Of a stretch of DNA of 64,000 nucleotides, positions 13,097 to 43,438 are shown piece after piece. Each line of letters opens with the position of its first letter. The stretch's first letter is position 1. Location of the stretch: IMG/VR virus record IMGVR_UViG_3300048008_000449, positions 1 through 64,000 of that record; one strand, 5' to 3'. Below the pieces are notes generated by a model that saw nothing but the letters and a program-made list of their open reading frames with translations, made no database searches and was not told where the DNA came from. Made by a program: the position numbers and the translations under genes.

Positions 13097-14126
13097 ACAC
13101 GGAGTAACAATAGGTCCTGTCGGAAACGTCAGACCTTGTTGTATGTACATGAATCAAGATTTAGACAAGCGTTATAATGACGAAGGCTGGCGAGAAGAGT
13201 TTGACCAACTATATGAAGAAAGTCTTACTAAATGGTTGCCCAATTGTTACGAGTGTAAAGCAGAAGAAGACAGAGGCGAAAATAGTTTACGTATGGATGC
13301 TAACAGATGGTTTGAAGGCACAGAAGGAATTCAGTATTGGGATTTAAAATTGCATAACACATGCAATTTAACTTGTGTTATGTGCAATCCTGTTAGCAGT
13401 AGTAAGTGGCAAACACTAGTAAACAATAACCCTGAAGAAGAATGGCTTGGTGTTGTTAAAAAAGAAGCACAAATGAAAACTGGTTGGCATAAAGATATAT
13501 TGCCACTAATGATGGAACAACTTTATGATACAAAATATTTAAAATTTACAGGTGGCGAACCATTAATGATTCCACATGTAAGAAAGATTATTAAAAAATT
13601 ATATGACGAGGAAGTATCACCAGCGGTGCGTCTAAGTATTATTACTAATGGAACAATTCCATTAGATGCTGAAATGCTTAAAATGCTATTAACATTTAAG
13701 CGTGTACTGTTTATTGTAAGTGTTGACGGACTAGGCGAGAGATTTGAATATATCAGACAAGGATCAAATTGGCAAGAAGTTGAAAAGAATCTTCAACAGT
13801 TTAAAAAAATTGAAACAATGCACAACAACTTTGGATTGAAAATTAACTTCCTTCCAATGGCAGTTAATGCTGCTCAGCATGATGAGGCAGAACAATGGGC
13901 TAAGAAGAATAAATATGAATTTAGTCATAGTGTTGAAATATATAGACCAAAGTATTTGACATATGCTAGTTTAAATGCTAAACTAAGAGATAGATATAAT
14001 ATAACTTCGCATTACGAATATGACGAAGAACAATACCAACAGCTATTAAAACATATGGCTATAAAAGATAAGTTATCAGGCACTAACTTTAAGAGTGCTT
14101 GTCCGGAGTTTTTTGAAGATGAGTAA
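13074..14126 (+). CDS. Radical SAM protein with N-terminal SPASM/Twitch-like domain
   Basis: PKC..GNVRPCC..CYEC; CNLTCVMC; TGGEP; ITNG; SVDG..YIR. Confidence 0.93.
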   Translation: MPKCLMFKHGVTIGPVGNVRPCCMYMNQDLDKRYNDEGWREEFDQLYEESLTKWLPNCYECKAEEDRGENSLRMDANRWFEGTEGIQYWDLKLHNTCNLTCVMCNPVSSSKWQTLVNNNPEEEWLGVVKKEAQMKTGWHKDILPLMMEQLYDTKYLKFTGGEPLMIPHVRKIIKKLYDEEVSPAVRLSIITNGTIPLDAEMLKMLLTFKRVLFIVSVDGLGERFEYIRQGSNWQEVEKNLQQFKKIETMHNNFGLKINFLPMAVNAAQHDEAEQWAKKNKYEFSHSVEIYRPKYLTYASLNAKLRDRYNITSHYEYDEEQYQQLLKHMAIKDKLSGTNFKSACPEFFEDE

Positions 14127-15336
14127 AAAATTACCAAGTGATACATTTTGTGTATTACCATTCATGCATGCCGCGGTTAATCCTGGCGGCGGGTTTCGTG
14201 TTTGTTGTAACAGTAATCCTGCTAACAATAAAGTACTAAAGGATGATGGAAGTGGCAAAGCGTATAGAATATTTAAAGATGATATCAACGATGCATGGAA
14301 TAGTAAATGGTATAAAAATATTCGTAAGCAGTTTATTAACGGAGAACGTCCTGAAACATGTCAAAGATGTTTCCGTGAAGAAGATGCAGGCATAAGAAGT
14401 CCACGTACAGGATATAATGAAAAATGGTATAAAGATGATGTTAATGTAGCTGAAGAAATACCATTGGATATACGTTATGTAGATTTGCGTTTAGGTAATT
14501 TATGTAATTTAAAATGTAGAATGTGTAATCCATGGAGTAGTAGTATGTGGGTTAAAGACTGGAACAAAGTAACAGGACTTGCAGAACTTACACCAAACGA
14601 TCCATTAAGTGATGAAGAACTAGATTATATGGAAGTTATGAAAGTATGGCCTGATCGTAAACAAACAGGATTAAACTTTGTAGAGATTGCAGGAACTATT
14701 GAAGAAATTTATTTAACAGGCGGTGAACCTACGTTAGCAACAAGTCAATATGCATTATTTGATTATTGTATTGAAAACGATTTAGCAAGTGGTATTAAAT
14801 TAAAGTATAACACAAACTTAACAAATATACCACAAAAGATGATTGACTATTGGAGTCACTTCAAAGGTGTACAACTTAATACAAGTATTGACGCAACAGG
14901 TGACAGAGATAGATATGTTAGATATCCAAGTAGTTGGCCAAAAATAGAACAAACATTTGACAAGCTGTTAGCATTACCAAATGTAGCAATTCAGGTACAT
15001 TGTACAGTACAAGTATTAAATATGTGTGCTATGAGTGAATTGTTTGATTGGACTAGAAGTAAAGGCATACCTGACAAAGACATATATTTAAATATTCTTA
15101 ATCATCCAGAAATGTACAACATTCGTACATTACCTAAAGAATTAAAACAACTAGCAGAACAGCGTTTACAACCATATTTAGACATACCAAAAGTAGCAGA
15201 TACAATTAAGTATATGTGGGCTGAGGATTGGCACGAAAAACGTTGGAAGGAATTTGTTGATTTTAATATGAAAACAGATGAATTACAAAAAGGTGACTTA
15301 CTAACAGTAGCCCCAGAATTTAAGAATTTTGTTTAG
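14119..15336 (+). CDS. Radical SAM protein with N-terminal SPASM/Twitch-like domain
   Basis: FCVLPFMH..RVCC..CQRC; CNLKCRMC; TGGEP; YNTN; SID..YVRYPS.W; start set at ATG 14119. Confidence 0.94.
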   Translation: MSKKLPSDTFCVLPFMHAAVNPGGGFRVCCNSNPANNKVLKDDGSGKAYRIFKDDINDAWNSKWYKNIRKQFINGERPETCQRCFREEDAGIRSPRTGYNEKWYKDDVNVAEEIPLDIRYVDLRLGNLCNLKCRMCNPWSSSMWVKDWNKVTGLAELTPNDPLSDEELDYMEVMKVWPDRKQTGLNFVEIAGTIEEIYLTGGEPTLATSQYALFDYCIENDLASGIKLKYNTNLTNIPQKMIDYWSHFKGVQLNTSIDATGDRDRYVRYPSSWPKIEQTFDKLLALPNVAIQVHCTVQVLNMCAMSELFDWTRSKGIPDKDIYLNILNHPEMYNIRTLPKELKQLAEQRLQPYLDIPKVADTIKYMWAEDWHEKRWKEFVDFNMKTDELQKGDLLTVAPEFKNFV

Positions 15337-16048: not shown

Positions 16049-16612
16049 ATGAAAATAATCGCAACCGGTAATCCAGAATTTGGTGTTGCAAAAGCAATTG
16101 CTGAACGGTTTCCTGAAACAACCTTTGTCAATAGAACTGACTGGGGATATGATTTATGTCAAGATTCATATAAAAAGAAACTAGCAGAAAAGGCTCTTAA
16201 TTATGACGTCTTTATTAACTGTTCCGCACTATGGCAGTATCATCAAACTATGCTACTAGATGTAGTCTACAAAAATGCTTTAAAGAACCTTAAACGACTA
16301 CATATCGTGTCTTTGGGTAGTACAACTGACAGAGCCACCAAAGGTAGCGACTGGCATTATCAACAAGAAAAGAAGGCATTGCGTAGTACAAGCAATGCAT
16401 TGGGCTTAAAAAGCATATGGGCTGGTGGACCAAAAGTAAGTTATGTTACATTTGGAACACTGGAAAATAATGCACATAAGCATCCAGGAAGAACAGTAAT
16501 GAAACTAAACGAAGCCGTAGATATGATAGAATATGTAATTAATATGCCTTATCATTTAAACGTTAACGAACTAAGCATTGACCCAATGCAAACGGATTGG
16601 CCAAATGAATAA
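16049..16612 (+). CDS. Short-chain dehydrogenase/reductase (SDR)
   Basis: KIIATGNPEFGVAKAI Rossmann motif, INCS, SLGS, YQQEK (YxxxK). Confidence 0.8.
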   Translation: MKIIATGNPEFGVAKAIAERFPETTFVNRTDWGYDLCQDSYKKKLAEKALNYDVFINCSALWQYHQTMLLDVVYKNALKNLKRLHIVSLGSTTDRATKGSDWHYQQEKKALRSTSNALGLKSIWAGGPKVSYVTFGTLENNAHKHPGRTVMKLNEAVDMIEYVINMPYHLNVNELSIDPMQTDWPNE

Positions 16613-17780
16613 ATTTTGCTACATGCCTTGGCATGCAATCACGTTGAGTGCAAATGGTGATATTAAGCCATGCTGTCAATTTAGTAATAAAGGTCGTTTA
16701 CCTAATACACAACATGAAACTATTATGGAAAACTTTAATAGTGAACGTATGCAAGAACTACGTAAAGACTTTCTAAAAGGTGTACAACCTAGTGCTTGCA
16801 ATAGTTGTTGGGAGAGAGAAGATTTAGTAGGACAAAGTAGACGCCTGTGGTTTAATAAAAAGTTTATGAAGTTTGATGCTGATTTTATAAATGGCAATAC
16901 ACCTGATACATATGATGTACCAAATCCAAAGTTCTATCAAGCAGATATTAACTTATCAAATGTGTGTAATTTAAAATGCCGTATGTGTGGAAGTTGGGCA
17001 AGTAACAGTTGGTTCGAAGAAGAAATAGCGTTAGCTAAAATAGACAAGCGTTATGAAAAGAATGAAAGAGCAGTTCCATTACAACAATATGGATTAGAAG
17101 ACTTACGCAATATGCTACCTCATTTAAAAGATGTAAAGCGTATAGACTTTAAAGGCGGAGAGCCTATGATGGCTAAACATCATAATCAATTCTTACAATG
17201 GTTGATTGATGAAGATATGACTAACATTGAATTATTTTACACAACAAACGGAACAGTACAAAATCCTAAAATACTGAACTTGTTAAAACAGTTTAAACGT
17301 GTTAGTATATGTTTTAGTATAGAAGGTACTGGAGAACTATATAGATATATTAGAGGTGGCAAATACGAACTAGAAGATTTTGAATTCACACTATCAGAAT
17401 ATGATAAGTTACCAAATGTACAAATTATGTTTAATGTAACATTACAAAATTATAATGTATTTAACTTACCAGACTTGCATTTTTTCTTGCATGAAATGGA
17501 AGATAAATACGAGAGAGTAAGTGCTAACAGTAGTTTCACTACTATCTGTAACAAACCAGCATATTTAAGTCCAATGAACTTGCCAGATGATTTACGAGAT
17601 AAAGCAATTAAAAACTTATCCTTGTTTGAAGATTTTGACAAGTTAGTTGAGAGTATGAAAGCTAGAACATTTAATCCTGAACTATGGGATACATTTATTA
17701 ACTTTACAAACGACTTAGATAAAATGCGAGGAGATAGTGTAGTTAAAGCTGTACCTCAACTAAAGGAATATTTTAAATGA
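16605..17780 (+). CDS. Radical SAM protein with N-terminal SPASM/Twitch-like domain
   Basis: FCYMPWH..KPCC..CNSC; CNLKCRMC; GGEP; TTNG; SIEG..YIRG; start set at ATG 16605. Confidence 0.94.
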   Translation: MNKFCYMPWHAITLSANGDIKPCCQFSNKGRLPNTQHETIMENFNSERMQELRKDFLKGVQPSACNSCWEREDLVGQSRRLWFNKKFMKFDADFINGNTPDTYDVPNPKFYQADINLSNVCNLKCRMCGSWASNSWFEEEIALAKIDKRYEKNERAVPLQQYGLEDLRNMLPHLKDVKRIDFKGGEPMMAKHHNQFLQWLIDEDMTNIELFYTTNGTVQNPKILNLLKQFKRVSICFSIEGTGELYRYIRGGKYELEDFEFTLSEYDKLPNVQIMFNVTLQNYNVFNLPDLHFFLHEMEDKYERVSANSSFTTICNKPAYLSPMNLPDDLRDKAIKNLSLFEDFDKLVESMKARTFNPELWDTFINFTNDLDKMRGDSVVKAVPQLKEYFK

Positions 17781-18499
17781 GAAAACTTGTAGGTATTGAA
17801 GATAATCATGCACCTAAGGATGAGTTACTACGAGTAGAATGGAATTTAGGAAAACGTTGTAATTACAATTGTAGTTACTGTGGTAACGAACTACATAATA
17901 AAACAAGCGAGCATATGCCTTGGGAAGTTTATACTAATACAATAGATAAAATTGTAGAAGCAGCAATGGGCAAAAAGATTAAAATTAGTTTTACAGGCGG
18001 TGAGCCATTTGTACATCCAAAGTTTATTGATATGTTAAAGTATGCTAAAGAAAATGGTGTATATAGATGTAGTGTTACAACAAACGGAAGTCCACCACCT
18101 AAGATATATAAGAAAGCATTGCCATATTTACATTATGTTGTAATCAGTTATCATTTTGAATTTGCATATCATGAGAAAGTTATTAATAACATTACAGGTA
18201 TGTGGAAAGAGATACAAGAATATAGAGCTAAAGATGATTACAAAGGCATGCATGTTCATATTATGGCTTTACCAGGACACTTGCCACAATGGAAAGAAAT
18301 CATAGACGAATTAAAAGAATGTGGAGTTGAGTATACTATAAGAAAAATTAGACCACGTGTTAACATGGATCGTACAGGTTGGAATAAACCATATGCTGAC
18401 GGTATGTTAGGGCAACATCCTAAACACGAAGAAACAGAAAAGTTTGCAGGACAATATTATAGTAATGAAGAAGAGGAGTGGTTAAAAGTAAATGCCTGA
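17777..18499 (+). CDS. Radical SAM protein, core only (paralog of the N-terminal part of 23454-24629)
   Basis: VEWNLGKRCNYNCSYC, SFTGGEPF.HP, TTNG, SYHFE. Confidence 0.92.
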   Translation: MRKLVGIEDNHAPKDELLRVEWNLGKRCNYNCSYCGNELHNKTSEHMPWEVYTNTIDKIVEAAMGKKIKISFTGGEPFVHPKFIDMLKYAKENGVYRCSVTTNGSPPPKIYKKALPYLHYVVISYHFEFAYHEKVINNITGMWKEIQEYRAKDDYKGMHVHIMALPGHLPQWKEIIDELKECGVEYTIRKIRPRVNMDRTGWNKPYADGMLGQHPKHEETEKFAGQYYSNEEEEWLKVNA

Positions 18500-19799
18500 T
18501 ACTAATTATCATAGAGACATATACACCAGAAAACGAAAAGTTAAAGAATGGATGGCTGAACCTGGAAATAATTTTTGTGCATTGCCGTTTATTCATATGG
18601 CAATTGAAGCAGATGGGCAGGTAAGACCTTGTTGTATGGGAGATCCTTTTGACAATATTAATGTTTCAGGCGGTACAATAGAGAGTGCATATAATCACCC
18701 TGAAAGACAAGAATTTGTACAAGCATTTAAAGACAACAAACAACATCCAAAGTGTAATGTATGTTGGAATGCATCATATAGTATACGTAGTAGATATTCA
18801 TCAAATGACATGTCTATAAAATTTACTGAATCAGTAATGGAAGGCAATACCCCAGAAGCATCATTAAAATGGTTAGAAATTAAACCCGGAAACAGATGTA
18901 ATTTAAAATGTAGAATATGTGGGATACACAATAGCAGTACATGGACAAAAGATCATCATATTCTAAAAGAACACAAGAGCGTAAAATTTAAAGATTCATT
19001 TGCATTTAAATATACACAAAAATGTAATTGGGTCGATGATCCTAACTTCTGGAATGATATAAATCAGTTAGATGAAATACAAGATTTACACTTTATGGGT
19101 GGTGAACCTTTTATGGTATTAGAGCATTTTCAGTTACTTGAGAAATTAGTAGCTAGTCGAGATTGTAGTGATATCACTATTAGATATAATACAAATGGTA
19201 CTTATTATCCAACAGCAGAACAATGGAAATTGTATGAGAATTTTAGACAAGTAAAATTTCAAGTAAGTATTGATGATGTTGGTCCAAGATTTGAGTACGC
19301 TCGTAAAGAAGCAAAGTGGGATCTAGTAAAAGAAAATCTAAGAAAGTTTAGAGAAGCAAAACTATTATGCGAAGTTAAAGCAAAAAATGATCCCATCAAT
19401 TATCCAGTAACAAAAGTTAGAGCAAATTTAGACCCAACAGTAAGTATGTTTAATATATTTTACTTAGATGTTATTGAAGAAGAATTTAATAACATGGGTT
19501 GGCCTTTGGGAAGTCATGCAGATCATTATGTCTATAATGGACCAAATAATATAAGAAACTTGCCAGATGAATATAAACATATAATAACTGAAAAATATAA
19601 AGACACTAAAAGTACTTGGATACCAATGGCAGTAGATTATATGTGGACAGCCAAAAGTGATTATGAACAGTGGATGATGTTTGTAAAACAGACTAAAGAA
19701 ACAGACACAGTAAGAAATGAAAGTTTTAGTGATGTATATCCTGAATTTTATAATCTTATAAAAAGTGAATATGATAGGTATGAACCAATAGATGAATAA
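18492..19799 (+). CDS. Radical SAM protein with N-terminal SPASM/Twitch-like domain
   Basis: FCALPFIH..VRPCC..CNVC; CNLKCRIC; GGEPF; YNTNG; SIDD..FEYAR. Confidence 0.94.
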   Translation: MPDTNYHRDIYTRKRKVKEWMAEPGNNFCALPFIHMAIEADGQVRPCCMGDPFDNINVSGGTIESAYNHPERQEFVQAFKDNKQHPKCNVCWNASYSIRSRYSSNDMSIKFTESVMEGNTPEASLKWLEIKPGNRCNLKCRICGIHNSSTWTKDHHILKEHKSVKFKDSFAFKYTQKCNWVDDPNFWNDINQLDEIQDLHFMGGEPFMVLEHFQLLEKLVASRDCSDITIRYNTNGTYYPTAEQWKLYENFRQVKFQVSIDDVGPRFEYARKEAKWDLVKENLRKFREAKLLCEVKAKNDPINYPVTKVRANLDPTVSMFNIFYLDVIEEEFNNMGWPLGSHADHYVYNGPNNIRNLPDEYKHIITEKYKDTKSTWIPMAVDYMWTAKSDYEQWMMFVKQTKETDTVRNESFSDVYPEFYNLIKSEYDRYEPIDE

Positions 19800-20157
19800 T
19801 TTTAAAAATATAATAACACATTACAGTGATGGTACAAGTGAAGAAGATAATGTAAATAATGTAATGGCACGAGATGAAAATGATTTCCGTGGTTGGGAAT
19901 GTTGGGCTGGTGTACAAAATATTACAATAAGCAATACAGGTGATGTGTATAGAGCAATATGCAAAGTAGGAGGCAAACTAGGAAACATATATGATGGATT
20001 TGAAATGCCACTTGAAACAATTATTTGTAACAAGCCTAGATGTATATGTGCCGCTGATGTACAACTATCAAAAGCACAACCAGAGCATGTTACAAAATTA
20101 AGAGTAGGAAAAGATTGGATGGACGATGTTTATAGTTCGGGTATAAAAGATGAGTAA
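19792..20157 (+). CDS. Stand-alone SPASM-like domain protein
   Basis: FRGWECWAG..G.VYR..C..LGNI..GF..C...C.C.AD.Q.SK matches the C-terminus of 23454-24629 (FEGWECSSG..C..LGNI.TGF..C...C.SSADSKIPK). Confidence 0.82.
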   Translation: MNNFKNIITHYSDGTSEEDNVNNVMARDENDFRGWECWAGVQNITISNTGDVYRAICKVGGKLGNIYDGFEMPLETIICNKPRCICAADVQLSKAQPEHVTKLRVGKDWMDDVYSSGIKDE

Positions 20158-21457
20158 ACAAAGCAATTATGAAAAGTTCTACGAGAACGCTATAGGAAAA
20201 ATTGGCAAACTGCCAGTGGATAAAGAATCATTTTGTCCATTGCCATTTGTACATGTAAGCACTATGCCGCATGGAGAAGTTAAACTATGTTGTAGAGCAC
20301 AACCACCAAAGAATGGAAAAAATCCAAATGTTAAAGATGAAGATTTTAATCTAAAAGATTATTGGCACAGTGAGTATATGAATGAGATACGAGATTCCTT
20401 AATCACAGGTGAGAAACATCATCAGTGTAAAAATTGTTGGAAGATGGAAGATAATAACATTGTTAGTTTACGTATGAATAGATTAACAGATTTAATGGAA
20501 ACTCCATCAACCAGAAATGCAGTTGAAAAATATTTAGTAGATAGAGAAGTAGATTTTAAAATTCCACTGATAGAACTTAAACTAAGCAACGTATGTAATT
20601 TTAAATGTCGTATGTGTTGGCCAAAAGACAGTTCAAAGTGGATGCAAGATTGGGATAAAGTAAAACAATTCTATAATAAAAATGACAGAGAATATGTAGA
20701 TGAAATTGTAGACAGTAATGATTTACGTAAATCTAGAGTAATGAACTTGTATGAAAAAGATGAACATTTTGTTCCACAATTATTAGAAGTAATGGAAACT
20801 GTAGAAGAGATTGAATTTGCAGGCGGTGAGCCACTTATGGATCCTATTCATTATCGTGTATTAGACAGTATTCCACATCCAGAAAACGTTACATTAAAAT
20901 ACAGTACAAACCTAAGTATTATGAAAATGGGTAAACATAGTGTTATTGACTTATGGAAAAAATTTAAAAGCATTAAACTAACAATCAGTATTGATGGACA
21001 CAAAGAGCTTAATGCTAAAATAAGAAGAGGGTCTGATTGGGAACTATTAAAAAGTAACATTAACTTAGTTAAGAAAGAATTAACTAATATTGATGTTATC
21101 AAAGGAACTACATGTATTAGCGGAATGAATGCAAAAGAACTAGGCGAAACAGCTGAAGCTATTGTATTCGAATTAGGTATACACTGGCATACAAGCCGTG
21201 TACAATGGCCTGATTTCTTACATGCTAACGTATTACGCCCAACGGAGCTTCAAGGTGGAATAGACGGCTTAAAACGGGTATTTGATAGCTTAAACCTACC
21301 AGAAAGACGTATGGTAGGTAGACGCTTTATGTTTGAAACACATTTAAATGGTGCTATGCATTGGCTACAATCTTGTATTGACAATAACAAGCACGAAGAA
21401 AAATACGAAGCATTTTGTAAGTTTAATCAGACAATTACGGACATTGATGATGACTAA
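20150..21457 (+). CDS. Radical SAM protein with N-terminal SPASM/Twitch-like domain
   Basis: FCPLPFVH..KLCC..CKNC; CNFKCRMC; AGGEP; YSTN; SIDG. Confidence 0.94.
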   Translation: MSKQSNYEKFYENAIGKIGKLPVDKESFCPLPFVHVSTMPHGEVKLCCRAQPPKNGKNPNVKDEDFNLKDYWHSEYMNEIRDSLITGEKHHQCKNCWKMEDNNIVSLRMNRLTDLMETPSTRNAVEKYLVDREVDFKIPLIELKLSNVCNFKCRMCWPKDSSKWMQDWDKVKQFYNKNDREYVDEIVDSNDLRKSRVMNLYEKDEHFVPQLLEVMETVEEIEFAGGEPLMDPIHYRVLDSIPHPENVTLKYSTNLSIMKMGKHSVIDLWKKFKSIKLTISIDGHKELNAKIRRGSDWELLKSNINLVKKELTNIDVIKGTTCISGMNAKELGETAEAIVFELGIHWHTSRVQWPDFLHANVLRPTELQGGIDGLKRVFDSLNLPERRMVGRRFMFETHLNGAMHWLQSCIDNNKHEEKYEAFCKFNQTITDIDDD

Positions 21458-22496: not shown

Positions 22497-23464
22497 GTAT
22501 AGGAATTTTTGGCGATAGTTTTGCAAGGTGTAAAGTTCCATTAATGCATCCTTTAGACCCAAGTAATATTAAAACAGTAATACATACAAATGATGAATAT
22601 ATTAACTTCCAACAAAAAGTAGAAGCACTGATGCCAACTTGGGCTAAGTTATTACCAGATACTACAAATTTTGCAGCAGGCGGTACAGATTTATCTTGGA
22701 GTTTTTTAAAGTTTTTAGAACACCATGAAAAGTATGATAACATTATTTTTGTAGTTACATCGCCAAAAAGAATAACACTAAATGCTCCTCATATGTATGT
22801 GCCAAGTGACAGAGGAAGTAAATTTGGAGTAAATTTGATAACATCAGTAAGTGCTAATCAATCACTTCTTAAAAAAGAAAAGTTTTGTAATTCTGTAAAT
22901 GAAGAACATCTATATGTACGTGATGCTTACGATGCAATTAACAAATGGCAGACTCATATTCAACCAGAGTTTCCTGAAAGAGATTTCTTACATTACGGAA
23001 TATTAATTAATGAGTTGCAACGTATAAGACCAGATATTAAATTAATAAAAGCATTTTGTCACCCTACAGCAGATGATGAATGGAAGATGAAAGATTTTGG
23101 CAAAAAAAATTACTATCCATACAAGCATTTTGATAATATTCCACTTGACAATAAAGCTGAATACCTGCATAATATAGTAAAAGTTGAAGATTCTAATTAT
23201 TTTGAAGAACAAATAGCACAACCTAATAAATGGCATGATTGCAGATCAGGACATATAAGTATTACTTCGCATGTAATATTATATAAAATAATAACAAAGT
23301 GGTTAAAAACTAATGATACATGGCTTAACTTTGATATAGAAGAATTTAAAAATAATAAAGTAGATGCAAATGATAGCTTTATGGATAAAAGTAAATCGTT
23401 ACCAGAATGGCAAGATGCATTCCTACAAAGACGTATTAATGATGGAAAAATAAATGGAAGATAA
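22493..23464 (+). CDS. SGNH/GDSL-hydrolase-like protein, paralog of 21450-22496
   Basis: IFGDSFA, NFAAGGTD..WSF, DCRSGHI; shared FP.RD.L..RPD.K.I and WL.FD blocks. Confidence 0.6.
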   Translation: MSIGIFGDSFARCKVPLMHPLDPSNIKTVIHTNDEYINFQQKVEALMPTWAKLLPDTTNFAAGGTDLSWSFLKFLEHHEKYDNIIFVVTSPKRITLNAPHMYVPSDRGSKFGVNLITSVSANQSLLKKEKFCNSVNEEHLYVRDAYDAINKWQTHIQPEFPERDFLHYGILINELQRIRPDIKLIKAFCHPTADDEWKMKDFGKKNYYPYKHFDNIPLDNKAEYLHNIVKVEDSNYFEEQIAQPNKWHDCRSGHISITSHVILYKIITKWLKTNDTWLNFDIEEFKNNKVDANDSFMDKSKSLPEWQDAFLQRRINDGKINGR

Positions 23465-24629
23465 AGATTTAAAATGGAGTGAATATGATTTCACTAAAAC
23501 ACCGTACGATAAACTAGTACGTGTTGGACAACGAAATATGTTGTATAGAGACATGTTTACTGTTAGCTGGTTAATAGGAAGATTTTGTAATTACAATTGT
23601 AGTTATTGTTGGCCTTATGCTAGAAGTAGTAGAAAAGATCATAGACCAACTGAACTTAATTTAAAAACAATTGATGAGATTAAGCGTCAAGCACGTGAAA
23701 GAGGATTCAATAGTTTTCACTTTAGTTTAAGTGGGGGTGAGCCTACATTCCATCCTGGCTATTTAGATATGTTAAAACATTTAAGTGATGATGCACATAA
23801 TACAAATTATACAAGTGTGCATATGACTTCAAACTGTAGTCGTAATATGAAATGGTTTCAAACATATTGTGATTATGCTAGTAAGTTTCACAGAGCAAGT
23901 ATAACAGCAAGTTTACATGTTGAACACGTAAACACACCTGAAAAAATGCAAGACCTTGCAGACAAATTAATACTATGTCAAGAGCATGATGTACAAGTAA
24001 CAATTAATATGGTTATGGTACCTGCATTATTTGATGAATATTATGACAACGCATTATTCTTCCATAATCAAGGAATCAATGTTACACTAAAACCTCAATC
24101 AGATCCAACAGCAAGTAGAATTGTTGATGGTTATACAGATGAAATGAAAAGAAAATTACACAATGGTATGCCACAACGTAGTTACACTGAAGCTAAAGCA
24201 CAACAAAAGCAATTAGTAACTAGACCTAAGCCTACATTTAAAATTGACCCTGATGATCATTTCCGTAAACAGACAGCATCAGTTCCGTGGAACATGCAGG
24301 TGGAATTTAGAGATGATAAAGGTGATCCGTGGTATATGGATCAAGCTGAAAGATTTAATGCATTTAATTTTAATCAATTTGAAGGTTGGGAATGTAGTAG
24401 TGGATATCGTAGTATAATTATACGTGAACCAGATGGATCAGTTAAAAGGTCTTACTCATGTCATGATCAACCTTTAGGTAATATTGAAACTGGATTTAAA
24501 TTGTTTGATGGTCCAAAAGTATGTACTACAAAATCTTGTGTATCAAGTGCTGATAGTAAAATACCAAAACGAGCACCAGGAACAGCTATGCCCCTTTGGC
24601 CCGGTGATGATACTTTCTTTGAAGATTAA
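23454..24629 (+). CDS. Radical SAM protein with C-terminal SPASM-like domain
   Basis: SWLIGRFCNYNCSYC, SGGEPT.HP, TSN; C-terminal WEC..C..C...C. Confidence 0.93.
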   Translation: MEDKDLKWSEYDFTKTPYDKLVRVGQRNMLYRDMFTVSWLIGRFCNYNCSYCWPYARSSRKDHRPTELNLKTIDEIKRQARERGFNSFHFSLSGGEPTFHPGYLDMLKHLSDDAHNTNYTSVHMTSNCSRNMKWFQTYCDYASKFHRASITASLHVEHVNTPEKMQDLADKLILCQEHDVQVTINMVMVPALFDEYYDNALFFHNQGINVTLKPQSDPTASRIVDGYTDEMKRKLHNGMPQRSYTEAKAQQKQLVTRPKPTFKIDPDDHFRKQTASVPWNMQVEFRDDKGDPWYMDQAERFNAFNFNQFEGWECSSGYRSIIIREPDGSVKRSYSCHDQPLGNIETGFKLFDGPKVCTTKSCVSSADSKIPKRAPGTAMPLWPGDDTFFED

Positions 24630-25082
24630 TTATTTGATATTAGCCCAATGCTTTTTAGCATTTCCTGTATGATGAGCCCAACGTATAAACAGTCCTACTT
24701 CGCGACCGTTAGCCTCAATTTCCCAAGGTAGATCCCAATAGTCTGTTGTTTCTGGAACAAGTGTATCTTTCCATTTATAAAACTTTTTTTGTATTGCCGT
24801 ATCACTCATTTCGTTACGAGCATATTGCTTAACATGTACCATTTCGTGTGCAACAGTTTCAAGCATTCTACGCAACCCAACAGTATGATCAATTTCTAAT
24901 TCATACTCGCGAGCAGATTCACGTAGACAATAACCGTCGGCATCTGATCCTAATTTTTTGAGTTTAACTACTATGTCAAGAGTTTGCATTCGCGGCATTA
25001 ATTTCTTTATGCAGAATTCAACCATAGAACGTGCATATTCTTGTTTGGCTTTCGTGCCGCCTGTAATTTCAATGTCGTTCAT
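24630..25082 (-). CDS. Putative zinc metallopeptidase (HExxH), phage type
   Basis: TVAHEMVHVKQY and DLPWEIEA. Confidence 0.75.
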   Translation of the reverse strand: MNDIEITGGTKAKQEYARSMVEFCIKKLMPRMQTLDIVVKLKKLGSDADGYCLRESAREYELEIDHTVGLRRMLETVAHEMVHVKQYARNEMSDTAIQKKFYKWKDTLVPETTDYWDLPWEIEANGREVGLFIRWAHHTGNAKKHWANIK

Positions 25083-25093: not shown

Positions 25094-25387
25094 TTACTGG
25101 CCCAAATAATCTTTTTTCAGTACTTCTAACTGTTCTTCTGCATTTGGGTATTTTTGTAACAAATCAAGTTCTAACTGTTCTTTACTTTCAACTGCATTTT
25201 CAGATTCAATCTTATCAGCAATATCATTAAACGCTTCGTAAAAATCGTTGTTGCTACGATATAAATTGTGAACATCCATATATGCATCAGCATCAACAAA
25301 ATTCCAGTTTATTGAACCGTCTTCGTTTTTGTTCTCATCTAACTCAATTGCTGATCTCATTGTTGACTCTAATATTGCATTAATCAT
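25094..25387 (-). CDS. Hypothetical acidic protein, first gene after a consensus sigma70 promoter
   Basis: 97-aa ORF with AAGG-containing leader; no motif recognised. Confidence 0.65.
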   Translation of the reverse strand: MINAILESTMRSAIELDENKNEDGSINWNFVDADAYMDVHNLYRSNNDFYEAFNDIADKIESENAVESKEQLELDLLQKYPNAEEQLEVLKKDYLGQ

Positions 25388-25418
25388 AGTGTATACCTTT
25401 TTGTTAACTTATACATAC

Positions 25419-25447
25419 ATTATAGCAAGAACTCTTGGTAATGTCAA
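25419..25447 (-). promoter_or_regulatory. Consensus sigma70 promoter TTGACA-17-TATAAT with palindromic spacer CAAGA-NN-TCTTG
   Basis: Counted from the sequence: -35 at 25442-25447, -10 at 25419-25424, inverted repeat at 25426-25437. Confidence 0.85.
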
Positions 25448-25461
25448 CCTTTTTGTTCAAC

Positions 25462-25487
25462 AAAAAACCCTTGTATTACAAGGGTTT
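25462..25487 (-). terminator. Intrinsic terminator-like hairpin
   Basis: AAACCCTTGTA-T-TACAAGGGTTT 11-bp inverted repeat followed by a T-run on the minus strand. Confidence 0.7.
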
Positions 25488-25520
25488 ATAAATTAAATGC
25501 ATATTTATTTAGCTGATTAT

Positions 25521-25619
25521 TTAAATTAAGTCGTTTTTAAGACAGTATATCCATGCCCTAGCTTGTTGTTTTGTGTATCCTTCTTTACGCATTAGTCTGT
25601 AAATACTTGGATAACACAT
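25521..25619 (-). CDS. Possible 32-aa small protein
   Basis: MCYPSIYRLMRKEGYTKQQARAWIYCLKNDLI fills the gap after 25623; not in ORF track. Confidence 0.35.
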   Translation of the reverse strand: MCYPSIYRLMRKEGYTKQQARAWIYCLKNDLI

Positions 25620-25622
25620 TTT

Positions 25623-26147
25623 CTACTGAGGATTGTCTGGATCTGAGTGTATTTCGTTAATAATACGTTGATCAACCCCTTGCAATTTAAGTGCTTTTCG
25701 TTTGGGAGGTAAGCTATCTCGTCTAATATTATCAAATGTAAATTCTTGTATATTAGTTAATAACCCATTTTTTTGCTCTGTTTCTTTAAATACTCCAGTG
25801 GCTGGTTTTCCATTTTCTGCTTGTTCACCCATAGTTTGCATCTTACGTGCATTGCTCTTTGAATAAGGCATTGTATAGTACTGTGGTTGAGGCTCACCAA
25901 CATGTCTAACTAGATAGTAAATGTGAGGCTTTTGAACTTCTGCCCATAGTACTTCTACTTCTCCTTTTGGTAAACTATTAACTGGAGTTCCTTGTAATGC
26001 ATATATTGAATAACCTGTATATAAGCTACTTACTAGTACCAAAGGAATTAATAAAAATACAAGAATTCTGTTTTTGTTAGTTTGTATAATAGCATACGTT
26101 GTTAGTACTGCTAAACAAAAAAGTAAAATTGTGGCTATATAAATCAT
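25623..26147 (-). CDS. Membrane-anchored protein (two N-terminal TM helices), third gene of the TolQ/MotA-like cassette
   Basis: Hydrophobic residues 1-50, soluble C-terminus; 1-nt overlap with the upstream gene. Confidence 0.7.
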   Translation of the reverse strand: MIYIATILLFCLAVLTTYAIIQTNKNRILVFLLIPLVLVSSLYTGYSIYALQGTPVNSLPKGEVEVLWAEVQKPHIYYLVRHVGEPQPQYYTMPYSKSNARKMQTMGEQAENGKPATGVFKETEQKNGLLTNIQEFTFDNIRRDSLPPKRKALKLQGVDQRIINEIHSDPDNPQ

Positions 26148-26746
26148 TATTGAACTGCTCCATTTGATGGCACTATATCTCTGAAGTGCTGAAATATTTC
26201 TGTAACTTTACCATCTTTATCTACATTGAAAGCTGGCAATCTTTGTACTTCTCTGAAACGAAGTAAGTTTCCAGTTATACTATAAACTTGTCTAAATGGG
26301 TTTACTTTCATTACAGTAACAGTATAATCAATTACATCTTCTTTCTTTGAATAAGCATGCACCGATACATAATAATCGCCCGGAACAATACCTCTTATTG
26401 TAGTCATTTCTCTGTTTGATTTTAAAGTACGTGTTACACCATCAATAAGAACTACATCATTTGTTGTACCTAAATCATCTCTGTCTAAGTGTAATGGCGT
26501 TAATTCTCTGTTTGCAAAACCTACAGGTTTGTTGCTATCGTGTTGTACCCATAAATCAACATCATCTACTGATTCTTGTTCCCATTCGAGTATAATAATA
26601 AACTCTGCTTTAACAGGTATATCTGCTTTTTTAGTAATAGGATTAATCAATAGAAAAGCAATAACGAATAGCATTACAAATCCAATAAGGACATTGAAAA
26701 GCAAGTCGTTGAATGCTAGGTTGGAAGTGGTTCTTCTGTTAGGCAT
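26147..26746 (-). CDS. ExbD/TolR/MotB-like single-TM protein with a beta-rich soluble domain
   Basis: AFNDLLFNVLIGFVMLFVIAFLLINP (TM helix with the Asp typical of MotB/ExbD), followed by a DVDLWV-containing domain. Confidence 0.6.
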   Translation of the reverse strand: MPNRRTTSNLAFNDLLFNVLIGFVMLFVIAFLLINPITKKADIPVKAEFIIILEWEQESVDDVDLWVQHDSNKPVGFANRELTPLHLDRDDLGTTNDVVLIDGVTRTLKSNREMTTIRGIVPGDYYVSVHAYSKKEDVIDYTVTVMKVNPFRQVYSITGNLLRFREVQRLPAFNVDKDGKVTEIFQHFRDIVPSNGAVQ

Positions 26747-27182
26747 TAGACTTTTGTTCTTGTACCATTACTTGAACTTTTACAAATAAACTTGCAACCA
26801 ATCCACATAATGTTGTTAGTAGAGCGGTGCTCATGCCCGCCGCCATGTCAATAATGACTTGCCTCATACTTTCAATATCGCCTGGATCAATTTGTGAGAA
26901 GCTACTGCCTAGCATAAGCATGAAACCTATGACGGTTCCAACCATACCAACAGTCATGCACGACTCACCAATAAACCATGCCATATCGTTATCGTCTATT
27001 TGTTTGTAACTTCTATAACCAACTAAACCTGAGGCAATTGTAAACATACCTAGGATAGCAAAGCTAAGTTTTGTAGAATCATTTTCTATAAGAAATTGGA
27101 TCGCTCCGAAGTAAAAAGCAATGCCGAGTGCGATAGTTTGCATCACTGCAACTAGCCACCAAATTAAGAATTTTTTATTCAT
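26739..27182 (-). CDS. MotA/TolQ/ExbB proton-channel family protein
   Basis: VGMVGTVIGFM and GMSTALLTTLCGLVAS match the LG.LGTV.G / G..TAL.TT..GL signatures. Confidence 0.82.
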   Translation of the reverse strand: MNKKFLIWWLVAVMQTIALGIAFYFGAIQFLIENDSTKLSFAILGMFTIASGLVGYRSYKQIDDNDMAWFIGESCMTVGMVGTVIGFMLMLGSSFSQIDPGDIESMRQVIIDMAAGMSTALLTTLCGLVASLFVKVQVMVQEQKSNA

Positions 27183-27202
27183 GGAATACTTCCCTTTATA
27201 TT

Positions 27203-27448
27203 TTAGTATTTATCTATATTAGAAGATAAACGTAGAAGCATTGCCTGTTTTGGTTCAAACAGTAAATATACCTCAACGAACGTAGAATCACATTCTTCTA
27301 ATTTAGTTGCTTTGCTATTGTTAACAAAGATAGTTCTTTTTGGTTGATATTTCATTACTATTTGCTTTACGTCTTCAAGGGTTCCTGAGACTTTGAAAGA
27401 TATTAATTCACCTATATACTCTAGGCCATGTTTAAATTTTGATTTCAT
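27203..27448 (-). CDS. Hypothetical protein
   Basis: 81-aa ORF overlapping the upstream gene. Confidence 0.55.
   Translation of the reverse strand: MKSKFKHGLEYIGELISFKVSGTLEDVKQIVMKYQPKRTIFVNNSKATKLEECDSTFVEVYLLFEPKQAMLLRLSSNIDKY
27207..27213 (-). promoter_or_regulatory. AGATAAATA late-type promoter motif upstream of the TolQ/MotA-like cassette
   Basis: TATTTAT on + strand 25 nt upstream of the ATG at 27182. Confidence 0.45.
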
Positions 27449-28358
27449 TACATAATATCTCTGTTAAAAAGTCGCTTTTAGTAAGTGTCTTTAGTCTTAC
27501 GTAATCGTCTTTGATTAACAAGTTATTATATAATTGCTCGTATAGTACATCATTACTTGTAATGTGTAACGAATTACACATGTATTTATAGTAATCAGTA
27601 CTGGTCGTTTTATTAGTAGAAAATAAAGTTTTTAAATCAAACACAATATTTTCAATTGGTAATAATTCATCTTCTTGTAGATCTACAACATTAAGAAATT
27701 GTTCTGTAAACTTGTGTGTTCCTTCTTCTATTGCATATTCTAGCCCTTGTTCTCTTGCCATAGTTATTAGTGCCGCTGGTTTATCTTTCATCCATTCTAT
27801 TACTGTAGATACATTTTTTGGATCAATTTCTTCTGCAAGTATATTAGTTAAATGTTCTATAGAACTAGCTTCTGGTAAGTTGAACCAATTTTTAAATCTC
27901 CCAATTTTCTTACCATCCATAACAGCAATGTTTCCATGTTGATATCGATGATTAGTATCAAATATTCTATATGCTTTTGGTTGATTAACAAAGTATATTT
28001 TTTGTTCAGTGTCTAATAAATTACCTATTGATATACTAGAAGGTAAACACCATTTAAAATCAGATTCTAATATTGGTTCGTTTTCAATATCTCTAAAATC
28101 TTGTAATGAGTTTTTTATATGATCTAAGTAGTTTGGAGATTTATGAAAGTTTCTAAAATCATCACTTATCTCAGGTAATCCACCAACTTCTCTTGTATAG
28201 TCAGCACCCTGTCTAATATAATAATTATTATAAGTTAGTTCATCAATTGGTTTAGGAAATATACCAGTGTCTGGTGAGTATGTTAGTATATGTTGAAATA
28301 TACTTGACTGTCCAACATGGTCTTCAAAGTTGACGTTAAGTAATAAATTATTTAGCAT
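27432..28358 (-). CDS. Hypothetical protein
   Basis: Long ORF; start set at ATG 28358 overlapping the clamp-loader stop; no motif recognised. Confidence 0.7.
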   Translation of the reverse strand: MLNNLLLNVNFEDHVGQSSIFQHILTYSPDTGIFPKPIDELTYNNYYIRQGADYTREVGGLPEISDDFRNFHKSPNYLDHIKNSLQDFRDIENEPILESDFKWCLPSSISIGNLLDTEQKIYFVNQPKAYRIFDTNHRYQHGNIAVMDGKKIGRFKNWFNLPEASSIEHLTNILAEEIDPKNVSTVIEWMKDKPAALITMAREQGLEYAIEEGTHKFTEQFLNVVDLQEDELLPIENIVFDLKTLFSTNKTTSTDYYKYMCNSLHITSNDVLYEQLYNNLLIKDDYVRLKTLTKSDFLTEILCNEIKI

Positions 28359-29822: not shown

Positions 29823-30035
29823 TTACCACCATCCTAATGTTCTGCCATTTCCTGCAATAATTAGACAACATGTTAATACATGCAATACTATCCAGAACGT
29901 TCTGAAAGCTAGTGCCTTCACTACATCTGATTGTGTAATTGGCAAAAATTCAGGCTTATCATCATCATTGAGACCAATTGGCATTCCAACTGTTCTCGCC
30001 CAAACTTTTAAAAATCTTCTTTGTCCACTCATCAA
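29823..30035 (-). CDS. Small membrane protein
   Basis: 70-aa ORF, ATGA overlap with prs, C-terminal hydrophobic helix. Confidence 0.6.
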
Positions 30036-30979
30036 ATTTTATGTGTAAACAAACTGCTTACACTTTCTTCATTACTGACACGTCTAATAGCTTCACCAAA
30101 CATAGTTGATACACTTACTACTCGTGTCTTTTTACAATCATCTGGACAAGAAAATTTAATGCTATCTGTAATAACAAGTTCTTCCAATACACTATTCTCA
30201 ACTTTATGACATGCTTCGCCAGTTAGTACTCCATGTGTAATATATGCTCGTACACTTAATGCACCAGCGTCCATGATTGCTTTTGCGGCGTTACATAGTG
30301 TTCCACCACTGTCAATAATATCGTCAACTAGAATTGCATGACAACCTTTAACATCACCAATAAGTCCCATTACTTCACTTTCGCCTGCTTTGGGTCTACG
30401 TTTGTCCACAATAGCAATATCGCCTCCAAACATATCAGCAAATTTTCTAGCACGTACTGTACCACCTGCGTCTGGTGAAACAAATACTGTACCTTTTTCT
30501 ATTTCTACATTATACTTAATATCTTTTGCAAACGCAATACGACTTGTTAAGTCATCAACAGGAATATCAAAAAAGCCTTGTATCTGTCCTGCATGTAAAT
30601 CCATTGTAAGGATTCTATCTGCACCTGCTTGTGTAATAAGATTTGCAACTAGTTTTGCAGTAATTGGTGTACGGCTAGCACTCTTACGATCTTGTCGTGC
30701 ATAACCAAAGTATGGAATAACTGCCGTAATACGACTGGCACTGCTACGCTTAGCCGCATCAATCATAATCATTAATTCCATTAAATTGTCGTTCACAGGT
30801 GTGCTTGTGCTTTGTATAATAAAAACATCTTCGCCACGTATATTTTCTAAAAATTCTACACTACATTCGCCATCAGCAAAAGTTTTAATTTCAGCAGGTA
30901 CAATTGTAGCAAAACAATGAGAAGCAATTTTCTCTGCCATTTCAGTATTACTATTTCCTGCAATAATCTTCATCTTCAT
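30032..30979 (-). CDS. prs: Ribose-phosphate pyrophosphokinase (PRPP synthetase)
   Basis: [45 protein letters not shown]. Confidence 0.96.
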
Positions 30980-42925: not shown

Positions 42926-43438
42926 ATGCTAGTAAAACAAGATCCAGGTAAAAGAGACATAGAATTCTTCGGTTATATATGCGAAGATATGGGCTATATG
43001 AACAATGCTAATTTAGATGCAATGAAATATGATTGGTGTAAGAAGCACAACGGCGAATGGTGGGCGGCTTATCACAATGATGTAATTGTATCAATGGCGG
43101 GTTGTCATAAGTTTCATGATGGTCATAGAATGTTGTTCAGGGGAGTACAAACAATGCCTGCACAGACTGGATTAAGTAAAAATCATATGACTAGTATTCC
43201 ATGGAAATGGATATTACCTGAGCAAATAAAATGGGCTCAAAGTTCAGAAGAACAGCCTGCATATATTACAACAAATGTTGAGAATGATGCAAGTGGAAAA
43301 ATGAATAGAACAGATAGATTATTTCATCTGTTAGCTAAACAAGGAATAGTAAGTTTTTATACTGAAGAAGAAATATACGGAACAAAACAATCAGTATGGA
43401 AATTAAACTTAGAAAAATATTATGAAACATTGGTTTGA
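42926..43438 (+). CDS. GNAT-like acyltransferase-fold protein
   Basis: WWAAYHNDVIVSMAGCH..RMLFRG pattern; weak. Confidence 0.4.
   Translation: MLVKQDPGKRDIEFFGYICEDMGYMNNANLDAMKYDWCKKHNGEWWAAYHNDVIVSMAGCHKFHDGHRMLFRGVQTMPAQTGLSKNHMTSIPWKWILPEQIKWAQSSEEQPAYITTNVENDASGKMNRTDRLFHLLAKQGIVSFYTEEEIYGTKQSVWKLNLEKYYETLV

What the first reader, a model, noticed from the sequence alone, without database searches (positions are those of the whole stretch)
25623..27213. Phage-encoded MotA/TolQ/ExbB + MotB/ExbD-like + third membrane protein cassette under a late-type motif
Seen: a compact 147-aa TolQ/MotA-like channel, a single-TM partner with the conserved-type TM Asp (AFNDLL) and no OmpA-like domain that I can recognise, and a third anchored protein, all coupled and preceded by AGATAAATA. 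Known: this 5:2 ion-motor family powers flagellar stators, Ton/Tol and Zorya (ZorAB) defence. Inference: the phage builds a PMF-driven motor in the infected cell, possibly for superinfection exclusion, interference with host Ton/Tol/Zorya, lysis timing, or export linked to the modification system.
Basis: partly seen in the sequence, partly recalled or inferred. Interest (0 to 1): 0.62.

Follow-up and report, generated by a model that had tools for sequence, protein, structure and literature searches.

The report
Unstudied MotA/ExbB-type three-gene membrane module
A marine T4-like phage carries three coupled membrane genes that look like a stripped-down proton-driven Tol/Ton/stator-type motor, and the same unnamed trio turns out to be common in uncultured phages, in cultured Rhizobium phages and in some bacterial chromosomes, where nobody has studied it.

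Summary
On the minus strand, three overlapping genes follow AGATAAATA and end before a terminator-like hairpin.

- A (27182-26739, 147 aa) is a MotA/TolQ/ExbB-family protein: Pfam scores above its cut-off, and the profile match to TolQ/ExbB has 95% probability. It has four predicted membrane helices and almost no cytoplasmic part.
- B (26746-26147, 199 aa) has one N-terminal membrane helix. Its Asp14 is invariant in 136 diverse relatives and aligns with the key Asp of MotB. Its periplasmic part is a beta-sandwich closest to TerD, not an OmpA or ExbD domain.
- C (26147-25623, 174 aa) is a helical hairpin plus a small, possibly OB-like barrel.

The trio keeps the order A-B-C in 70 of 80 viral contigs examined. 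The same order holds in cultured Rhizobium phages and in bacterial chromosomes among housekeeping genes. It is therefore not phage-specific. Public records call almost all of these genes 'hypothetical'.

My best reading is a minimal proton-driven motor of the 5:2 kind that acts towards the periplasm. The 5:2 assembly, ion flow and the role in infection are untested. I rate it a new variant of a known kind, of moderately high interest.

The parts
27207..27215 (-). AGATAAATA, a T4-late-promoter-like motif 24 nt upstream of A's start codon. It overlaps the last codons of the upstream 81-aa gene.
   Evidence: 5 copies against 2.07 expected, and 4 of the 5 lie directly before an ATG. ATAAATA is also upstream of A in L002 (-29) and in L005/L006 (-79). 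Promoter activity has not been shown.
26739..27182 (-). Gene A, 147 aa. A minimal MotA/TolQ/ExbB-family subunit with four predicted membrane helices (about 5-29, 38-56, 70-92, 115-140) and no cytoplasmic domain.
   Evidence: Pfam PF01618, E 3.8e-7, above its cut-off. PADLOC ZorA core, E 1e-6. hhalign against TolQ/ExbB: probability 94.8%, E 4.9e-8, over TolQ TM2-TM3. Invariant G79, G82, T83, G86, T123, T124 and G127.
26147..26746 (-). Gene B, 199 aa. An N-terminal membrane helix with invariant Asp14, a conserved juxtamembrane linker (INPITKK.DIP.KAE), and a periplasmic beta-sandwich (47-185) carrying an invariant acidic cluster.
   Evidence: AF2 model, pLDDT 80. TerD is the top fold match: Foldseek E 5.5e-4, VIA Z 9.8 and 8.6. 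D14, W55, D62, D64, D90, G93 and E113 are invariant in 136 representatives. The Asp is in register with MotB's Asp in hhalign.
25623..26147 (-). Gene C, 174 aa. A membrane helical hairpin (2-22, 27-52) followed by a small periplasmic beta-beta-beta-alpha-beta-beta domain (63-140) and a poorly predicted tail.
   Evidence: AF2 model, pLDDT 75. Homologues always lie directly downstream of B. The structure matches the Rhizobium phage counterparts, E 7.6e-7 to 3.9e-6. No significant PDB match.
25521..25619 (-). A 32-aa ORF directly after C. It is possibly a real small gene of the same transcription unit, seen only in close relatives.
   Evidence: tblastn finds it at the same position in L144 (66% identity) and L145 (78%). 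It was not found in more distant relatives.
25465..25487 (-). Terminator-like hairpin (10-bp stem, T-rich tail), the likely end of the transcription unit.
   Evidence: It was the only such site in 25300-27600, and shuffles give a mean of 0.9, so on its own it is weak evidence.

Best explanation
The three genes encode one membrane complex of an uncharacterised branch of the MotA/TolQ/ExbB ion-motor family.

**What each part is**
- A is the channel or 'wheel' subunit reduced to its membrane core. It has four helices and the two channel-lining Thr positions of TolQ/ExbB, but no cytoplasmic domain.
- B plays the part of MotB/ExbD/TolR. Its N-terminus faces the cytoplasm. Its single helix carries the protonatable Asp14 near the cytoplasmic end, followed by a strongly conserved juxtamembrane linker.
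- B's periplasmic domain is a beta-sandwich of the TerD/PPC/DUF2135 kind with an invariant acidic cluster, probably a Ca2+ site. It stands where other B subunits have an OmpA-like or ExbD-type domain.
- C is a hairpin-anchored periplasmic protein that always accompanies A and B.

**How it probably works (inferred)**
- A and B assemble like the known 5:2 motors and use the proton (or Na+) gradient of the infected cell's inner membrane.
- A has nothing in the cytoplasm to push on, so the work must be delivered within the membrane or into the periplasm. C is then a partner or output. In logic this resembles TolQ-TolR-TolA or ExbB-ExbD-TonB rather than a flagellar stator or Zorya.

**Where else it occurs**
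- The same trio is chromosomal in some marine Alpha- and Gammaproteobacteria, Geminicoccaceae and Desulfobacterales.
- It is common in uncultured T4-like marine phages and present in cultured Rhizobium phages.
- The marine phage copies form their own clade.

**Likely role (a guess)**
The phage probably supplies its own copy of a host-type envelope function, possibly late in infection. What that function is remains unknown.
For: **A belongs to the family**
- Pfam PF01618 scores above its cut-off.
- hhalign against TolQ/ExbB gives 94.8% probability, E 4.9e-8, with GTV and ALxxT in register. Against MotA it gives 53%. The TolQ-versus-MotA control gives 92%.

**B resembles the B subunits**
- Asp14 is invariant in 28 and in 136 family members. 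It lies inside the predicted helix 9-34.
- hhalign of B against MotB aligns the Asp in register, with score 23.8 and P 0.01. This equals the ExbD-versus-MotB control (22.3, P 0.0096). The negative controls A and C give P 0.14-0.18.
- The basic N-terminus (MPNRR) fits the N-in topology.

**The genes are coupled**
- The genes overlap by 8 nt and 1 nt in the window.
- They overlap by 4 nt in RHph_I1_18 and at A/B in P10VF.

**The trio is a conserved module**
- All three are found in 75 of 80 IMG/VR loci, and the 5 exceptions lack flank at a contig end. They are adjacent in the order A-B-C in 70.
- The same order holds in about 40 other loci, in P10VF_191-193 and in RHph_I1_18 EVB91_122-124.

**It is also cellular**
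- The Geminicoccaceae and Desulfobacterales trios lie beside a GT20 trehalose-phosphate-synthase-family gene, acyl-CoA dehydrogenase and volactin genes.
- A Pelagibacteraceae MAG carries it beside sufB/D. A marine gammaproteobacterial genome carries it between fumarase, an adenylosuccinate-lyase-type gene and aconitase.
- 13 of 401 sampled Pseudomonadota genomes have B.

**Abundance and placement**
- B has 1979 cluster representatives and relatives on 402 IMG/VR contigs.
- The marine phage copies form a clade with 96% support.

**B's periplasmic domain**
- TerD is the top fold match, with Z 9.8 and 8.6 against 6.5 for the next entry.
- Seven of 136 members hit DUF2135 weakly and seven hit PPC weakly.

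**Possible transcription**
- Exact-match contigs in two metatranscriptome libraries cover A and the A/B junction. This is consistent with transcription but does not prove it.
Against: - No assembly, stoichiometry, ion flow or phenotype is shown.
- B has no significant sequence match to ExbD (hhalign P 0.15, Asp out of register).
- B has no Pfam MotB_plug or ExbD hit. Only 1 of 136 members hits MotB_plug, weakly.
- The B-MotB similarity covers 20 residues of a hydrophobic helix and is weak in absolute terms (hhalign probability 4%).
- The TerD resemblance is structural only. The profile comparison gives P 0.44.
- C has no recognisable relation to TonB or TolA, and its periplasmic part is too short to span the periplasm as they do.
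- The RNA-library contigs did not cover C.
Confidence: 0.6

Rival explanations
1. Lysis clock or PMF drain. The phage uses A-B late in infection as a regulated proton leak. The leak collapses the membrane potential and so triggers holins or sets lysis time, with C as the regulator.
For: A late-type motif lies upstream. From general knowledge of the family, unplugged MotAB-type channels leak protons and arrest growth. The juxtamembrane linker of B is strongly conserved and could act as a plug.
Against: The same trio is chromosomal, among housekeeping genes, in bacteria with no phage context. It lies beside replication or tail genes, and no lysis gene was identified among the neighbours examined. 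No expression timing is known.
Confidence: 0.1
2. Conflict function. The trio excludes superinfecting phages, or counters a host defence or uptake route that depends on Tol, Ton or Zorya-type motors. It could do this by mixing with or blocking the host complexes.
For: A's core matches PADLOC ZorA models weakly, E 1e-6 to 1e-3. From general knowledge, other phages and colicins exploit Tol and Ton. The trio is patchy in bacteria, 13 of 401 genomes, as accessory systems often are.
Against: A is 147 aa, far shorter than the PADLOC ZorA models (420-699 positions), and it lacks their long tail. B and C have no PADLOC hit. The cellular copies lie between core metabolic genes rather than in defence islands. 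The marine phage and Rhizobium phage copies each form an old clade of their own, with no sign of rapid turnover.
Confidence: 0.12
3. Not a motor. A is a small membrane protein that keeps only the MotA/ExbB core motif. B is a Ca2+-binding periplasmic protein held by an ordinary anchor whose Asp has another role. The three act as a static envelope or sensing complex, without ion-driven movement.
For: B has no significant match to ExbD or MotB domain models. A lacks every cytoplasmic feature of the studied motors. No assembly could be modelled here.
Against: A charged Asp invariant inside a membrane helix across 136 members at 29-50% identity is hard to explain otherwise. It sits in MotB's register. 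Its gene always directly follows a MotA/ExbB-family gene. The two channel-lining Thr positions of A are invariant.
Confidence: 0.12
4. Export or uptake linked to the neighbouring radical SAM modification cluster.
For: Radical SAM genes lie close by in the window (23454-24629), in L002-L004, and next to the Desulfobacterales trio.
Against: Where neighbours were examined, most trios had none nearby: L005, the Rhizobium phages, and the Pelagibacteraceae, gammaproteobacterial and Geminicoccaceae loci. In the window the radical SAM array is on the other strand and converges on the cassette.
Confidence: 0.03

Closest known systems
TolQ-TolR-TolA and ExbB-ExbD-TonB (Tol and Ton energisers)
   Same: - The gene order is channel subunit, then a single-helix Asp subunit, then a third anchored periplasmic protein.
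- A's core aligns best with TolQ/ExbB (hhalign 94.8%), including both channel Thr positions.
- The output is expected on the periplasmic side.
   Different: - A has four helices with N-in topology and lacks the cytoplasmic domain of TolQ/ExbB.
- B's periplasmic domain is a TerD/PPC-like beta-sandwich, not the ExbD/TolR fold, and it has no ExbD Pfam hit.
- C has a helical hairpin rather than one helix.
- C has no conserved His or Ser position in its membrane helices, unlike the SHLS motif that I recall (not tested here) for TonB and TolA.
- C has no TonB_C or TolA domain and only a short periplasmic part.
MotA-MotB / PomA-PomB flagellar stators
   Same: - A has four helices and N-in topology, as MotA does.
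- B's AFNDLLF helix aligns in register with MotB's (S/T)(F/Y)ADxM helix.
- The genes are translationally coupled.
   Different: - A has no torque-generating cytoplasmic domain.
- B has no OmpA-like peptidoglycan-binding domain.
- No MotB_plug hit reaches E 1.
- From general knowledge, SAR11-type bacteria such as the Pelagibacteraceae that carry the trio are non-motile.
ZorA-ZorB of Zorya anti-phage systems
   Same: The MotA/ExbB core gives weak PADLOC ZorA hits. It is paired with a subunit that has an Asp in its membrane helix.
   Different: A is 147 aa against PADLOC ZorA models of 420-699 positions, and it has no long tail. B and C have no PADLOC hit (ZorB included). The module is phage-borne or sits in housekeeping surroundings.
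TerD family (tellurite-resistance, Ca2+-binding beta-sandwich) and PPC/DUF2135 domains
   Same: B residues 46-194 superpose on TerD structures 2qz7 and 2kxt (Z 9.8 and 8.6). B's conserved DxDLW and LDRDDLG stretches fall opposite TerD's DLD and GDN acidic motifs.
   Different: Sequence profiles do not match significantly (P 0.44). From general knowledge, TerD proteins are soluble and cytoplasmic, whereas B's domain is membrane-anchored and periplasmic.

Membership tests
MotA/TolQ/ExbB proton channel family (PF01618): protein A | Match to the family model above the curated cut-off | tested here: met
   30.3 bits against a 22.9-bit cut-off, E 3.8e-7. In the phage record as a whole it is the only match.
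MotA/TolQ/ExbB proton channel family (PF01618): protein A | Conserved last two membrane helices with the GxxGTxxG and ALxxTxxG motifs (channel-lining Thr) | tested here: met
   hhalign against 37 TolQ/ExbB sequences gives 94.8% probability with the motifs in register. T83 and T124 are invariant.
MotA/TolQ/ExbB proton channel family (PF01618): protein A | Pentamer around two B-subunit helices (5:2) | not testable with these tools
No usable result was obtained.
MotB/ExbD/TolR-type B subunit: protein B | Single N-terminal membrane helix, N-in, with a conserved Asp near its cytoplasmic end | tested here: met
   Helix 9-34 in the model, pLDDT about 90. D14 is invariant in 136 members. The N-terminus is basic.
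MotB/ExbD/TolR-type B subunit: protein B | Encoded directly downstream of, and coupled to, the A-subunit gene | tested here: met
   8-nt overlap in the window. Adjacent in 70 of 80 viral loci and in the cellular loci.
MotB/ExbD/TolR-type B subunit: protein B | Sequence similarity of the membrane helix to known B subunits | tested here: inconclusive
   Against MotB: score 23.8, P 0.01, Asp in register. This equals the ExbD-versus-MotB control, but the probability is only 4%. Against ExbD: P 0.15, Asp out of register. MotB_plug hit in 1 of 136 members at E 0.005.
MotB/ExbD/TolR-type B subunit: protein B | OmpA-like (MotB) or ExbD/TolR-type periplasmic domain | tested here: not met
   No Pfam OmpA or ExbD hit at E <= 1. 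The modelled domain is a beta-sandwich nearest TerD.
Zorya (ZorAB plus partners) | Long ZorA with an extended C-terminal tail, and a recognisable ZorB | tested here: not met
   A is 147 aa. PADLOC hits cover only the core of ZorA models that are 420-699 positions long. B and C have no PADLOC hit. Neighbouring genes were not scanned against PADLOC.
Ton/Tol third component (TonB, TolA): protein C | Single N-terminal helix, long periplasmic spacer, TonB_C or TolA C-terminal domain | tested here: not met
   C has a two-helix hairpin, about 120 periplasmic residues, and no Pfam hit of those families at E <= 1. No column in its membrane helices is invariant.
TerD family: periplasmic domain of B | TerD fold | tested here: met
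   2qz7_B: Z 9.8, 130 residues aligned. 2kxt: Z 8.6. The next entry scores 6.5. Foldseek probability 1.0, E 5.5e-4 to 5e-3. This rests on a predicted model.
TerD family: periplasmic domain of B | Sequence membership (PF02342) | tested here: not met
   No Pfam hit. hhalign against 44 TerD sequences gives P 0.44.
T4-type late promoter | TATAAATA-like -10 element shortly upstream of the gene, used by a gp55-type sigma factor | tested here: inconclusive
   GATAAATA lies 24 nt before A's ATG, the motif is modestly enriched, and ATAAATA is upstream of A in two other lineages. Exact TATAAATA is under-represented, with 4 copies against 13.7 expected. The sigma factor and the transcription start were not examined.

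The most novel reading that the evidence does not exclude
The trio is a separate, minimal class of ion-driven 5:2 motors. It has a wheel with no cytoplasmic domain, an axle with a Ca2+-binding beta-sandwich, and a hairpin-anchored partner. Marine and rhizobial T4-like phages would have carried it for a long time as their own envelope machine, with a role in infection that differs from Tol, Ton, flagellar and Zorya motors.
Probability: 0.35. Interest if true: 0.8.

Novelty: new variant of a known kind. Interest (0 to 1): 0.62.

Why it matters
The MotA/ExbB 5:2 motors power flagella, gliding, nutrient import, envelope integrity and Zorya defence. Each newly understood branch has revealed a new use of the same engine. 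This branch is small enough to be a minimal model of the engine. It is very abundant in ocean viral sequence, and it occurs in streamlined marine bacteria such as Pelagibacteraceae. Almost every copy looked at carries no functional name.

I found no paper on it in the library searched. It also has cultured entry points in Rhizobium phages P10VF, RHph_I1_18 and 16-3. The question of what a phage does with its own ion motor can therefore be tested directly.

Tried and rejected
- **Complex prediction.** A in 4 copies plus B residues 1-50 in 2 copies gave 'no answer' (score 0.11 against a mark of 0.32). This counts neither for nor against binding.
- **Similarity to catalogued phages.** blastn of the cassette and tblastn of A found nothing. 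tblastn of B then found 29 Rhizobium and Sinorhizobium phage records.
- **PDB sequence searches.** Profiles of A and B gave nothing useful.
- **Family scans.** PHROGs, NCBIfam and PADLOC gave nothing for B and C, apart from a weak phrog_1735 hit for B at E 0.0045.
- **B against ExbD/TolR.** hhalign was not significant and the Asp was out of register.
- **B against TerD.** hhalign was not significant.
- **Fold searches with C.** The PDB-wide search was dominated by the helical hairpin. Foldseek gave only weak OB-like rows at E >= 0.08. The OB-like label is therefore tentative.
- **Literature.** Five searches found no paper on this trio. The library is incomplete, so this is not proof that none exists.
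- **Zorya membership.** Considered and rejected, because A is too short and has no tail.
- **Link to the radical SAM cluster.** Considered and rejected as a general rule, because the neighbourhood is not conserved.
- **Recent capture from a host.** Considered and rejected. The marine phage copies form their own clade, although the deep branches are unresolved and long.
Full report
**What is there**

The window belongs to a 204,772-base IMG/VR virus record. It carries T4-type replication genes: a family B DNA polymerase and a clamp loader. Three overlapping genes lie on the minus strand between 27215 and 25465.

- A is 27182-26739 (147 aa), B is 26746-26147 (199 aa) and C is 26147-25623 (174 aa).
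- A and B overlap by 8 nt. B and C share one base.
- AGATAAATA lies 24 nt before A's start codon.
- A 32-aa ORF follows C, and a terminator-like hairpin lies at 25487-25465.
- The motif occurs 5 times in the window against 2.07 expected, and 4 of 100 shuffles reach 5. Four of the five copies lie 5-24 nt before an ATG.
- ATAAATA also precedes A in two diverged relatives.

The promoter reading is plausible but unproven.

**Protein A**

- Pfam MotA_ExbB scores above its cut-off (30.3 bits against 22.9, E 3.8e-7).
- A profile of 26 relatives aligns to 37 TolQ/ExbB sequences with 94.8% probability (E 4.9e-8) over TolQ's last two helices. The GTV and ALxxT motifs are in register.
- The match to MotA is weaker (53%). 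The TolQ-versus-MotA control gives 92%.
- T83, T123/T124 and the flanking glycines are invariant.
- Hydropathy gives clear helices at about 5-29, 70-92 and 115-140. I read a weaker fourth at 38-56 from the sequence. Only about 13 residues separate helices 2 and 3.
- A therefore has MotA's four-helix, N-in layout but no cytoplasmic domain. This is an inference from the alignment and the charge distribution.

**Protein B**

- No curated library names it.
- The AF2 model (pLDDT 80) has a membrane helix at 9-34 and a beta-sandwich at 47-185.
- Asp14 lies within the helix near its cytoplasmic end. It is invariant in 28 close relatives and in 136 diverse representatives at 29-50% identity.
- In profile comparison, B's AFNDLLFNVLIGF aligns with MotB's helix with the Asp in register (score 23.8, P 0.01).
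- That is the same strength as the accepted ExbD-MotB relationship measured the same way (22.3, P 0.0096). A and C as negative controls give P 0.14-0.18.
- Against ExbD/TolR the comparison fails.
- The sandwich is nearest to TerD structures: Foldseek E 5.5e-4, and VIA Z 9.8 and 8.6 against 6.5 for the next entry.
- Its invariant acidic residues (D62, D64, D90, and nearly invariant D91 and D97) fall opposite TerD's Ca2+-binding motifs. The profile match itself is not significant (P 0.44).
- A few members hit DUF2135 or PPC weakly, and the Atlas names a nearest cluster 'YfaP (DUF2135)'.
- B therefore works like a MotB/ExbD-type subunit by architecture. It is not a member of either Pfam family, and it carries a different periplasmic domain.

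**Protein C**

- The model (pLDDT 75) shows a helical hairpin followed by a beta-beta-beta-alpha-beta-beta domain.
- PDB searches give only weak OB-like rows.
- In the viral structure library it matches the Rhizobium phage counterparts at E 7.6e-7 to 3.9e-6. This confirms independently that the third gene is the same protein across phages.
- It shows no TonB or TolA features.

**The trio is a conserved module and not phage-specific**

- Iterative searches over all fetched loci find A, B and C homologues in the same order almost everywhere.
- In 80 IMG/VR loci all three are present in 75, and the other five lack flank at a contig end. In 70 they are adjacent in the order A-B-C.
- The surroundings differ between loci. 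The trio lies next to the clamp loader in the window and in L002-L004, and next to a T4 gp15-type tail gene in L005.
- Cultured Rhizobium phages carry it as 'hypothetical proteins' (P10VF_191-193 and RHph_I1_18 EVB91_122-124). The temperate phage 16-3 has a diverged version, p038/p040/p042.
- The same trio lies in bacterial chromosomes among ordinary genes. In Geminicoccaceae and Desulfobacterales it sits beside a GT20 trehalose-phosphate-synthase-family gene, acyl-CoA dehydrogenase and volactin genes.
- In a Pelagibacteraceae MAG it sits beside sufB/D. In a marine gammaproteobacterial genome it sits between fumarase, an adenylosuccinate-lyase-type gene and aconitase.
- NCBI calls every cellular copy that carries a name 'hypothetical'.
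- 13 of 401 sampled Pseudomonadota genomes have B at E <= 1e-8.
- B's family has 1979 representatives at the 50% clustering level.
- In a quick maximum-likelihood tree of B the marine phage copies form one clade (96% support) and the Rhizobium T4-like phages another. Neither is nested inside a bacterial clade. Deep branches are unresolved and several are long.

**Presence and expression**

- Near-identical DNA is held by at least 14 seawater or viral metagenome runs from 13 studies.
- In two metatranscriptome libraries, exact-match contigs cover parts of A and the A/B junction (26545-26824, 26855-27084, 26550-26700 and 26735-26885). None of the listed pieces covers C.
- These are contigs and may include carried-over DNA. 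They are consistent with transcription but do not prove it.

**Interpretation**

Shown:
- A belongs to the MotA/TolQ/ExbB family.
- B has an invariant Asp inside a membrane helix and a TerD-like fold (on a predicted model).
- The three genes form a strict, widely conserved unit in phages and in bacteria.

Inferred:
- A and B form a 5:2-type ion-driven complex.
- With no cytoplasmic domain on A, the output is periplasmic or within the membrane, and C is the partner. This is Tol/Ton-like in logic.
- B's sandwich binds Ca2+ and some envelope component.

The biological role in infection is open. I favour a host-type envelope function that the phage brings along. The alternatives are a lysis clock, exclusion or counter-defence, and a static complex.

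**Limits**

No paper on this trio was found in the searchable library.

**Verdict**

The feature is real and ordinary in its building blocks. As a module it is an unstudied, minimal and very widespread variant of the ion-motor family, with cultured systems available to test it.

Noticed in passing
window 1-24629 (+ strand), and 54405-55709 (-): A long array of radical SAM paralogues. Several have a SPASM domain N-terminal of the radical SAM core: 4530-5780, 14095-15336, 16578-17780 and 18492-19799. Further radical SAM genes lie at 13074-14126, 20150-21457 and 23454-24629. The relatives L002-L004 also have radical SAM/SPASM genes just downstream of their trio.
   Followed up: partly
window 24630-25082 (-): A 150-aa protein with an HEMVH (HExxH) metalloprotease-like motif. 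It is a member of phrog_10499 (unknown function, E 3e-22) and lies two genes downstream of the cassette.
   Followed up: no
window 25521-25619 (-): A 32-aa ORF directly after C is conserved at the same position in two relatives, at 66% and 78% identity. It is probably a real small gene.
   Followed up: partly
window 27203-27448 (-): An 81-aa gene directly upstream of A is conserved in that position in five related viral contigs, at 35-56% identity. It is absent from more distant trios and has no family hit.
   Followed up: partly
window 1045 (+), 42897 (+), 63808 (-): The other intergenic copies of AGATAAATA also lie 5-20 nt before ATG codons. At 1045 and 42897 the ATG starts a listed ORF (1059-1739 and 42926-43438). 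This suggests a shared promoter-type element of this phage, while exact TATAAATA is under-represented.
   Followed up: partly
window 30032-30979 (-), and L002-L004 position 1: A ribose-phosphate pyrophosphokinase (PRPP synthetase) gene lies near the clamp loader, both in the window and in the distant relatives L002-L004.
   Followed up: no
L046 (Rhizobium phage 16-3) 3271-5132: The temperate phage 16-3 carries a strongly diverged A/B/C (p038, p040, p042), with extra small ORFs p039 and p041 between them. Its B lies on a very long branch.
   Followed up: partly
G002 (Geminicoccaceae genome) and G279: Two bacterial genomes hold two separate B-family matches each, so the module can be duplicated within a cell.
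   Followed up: no
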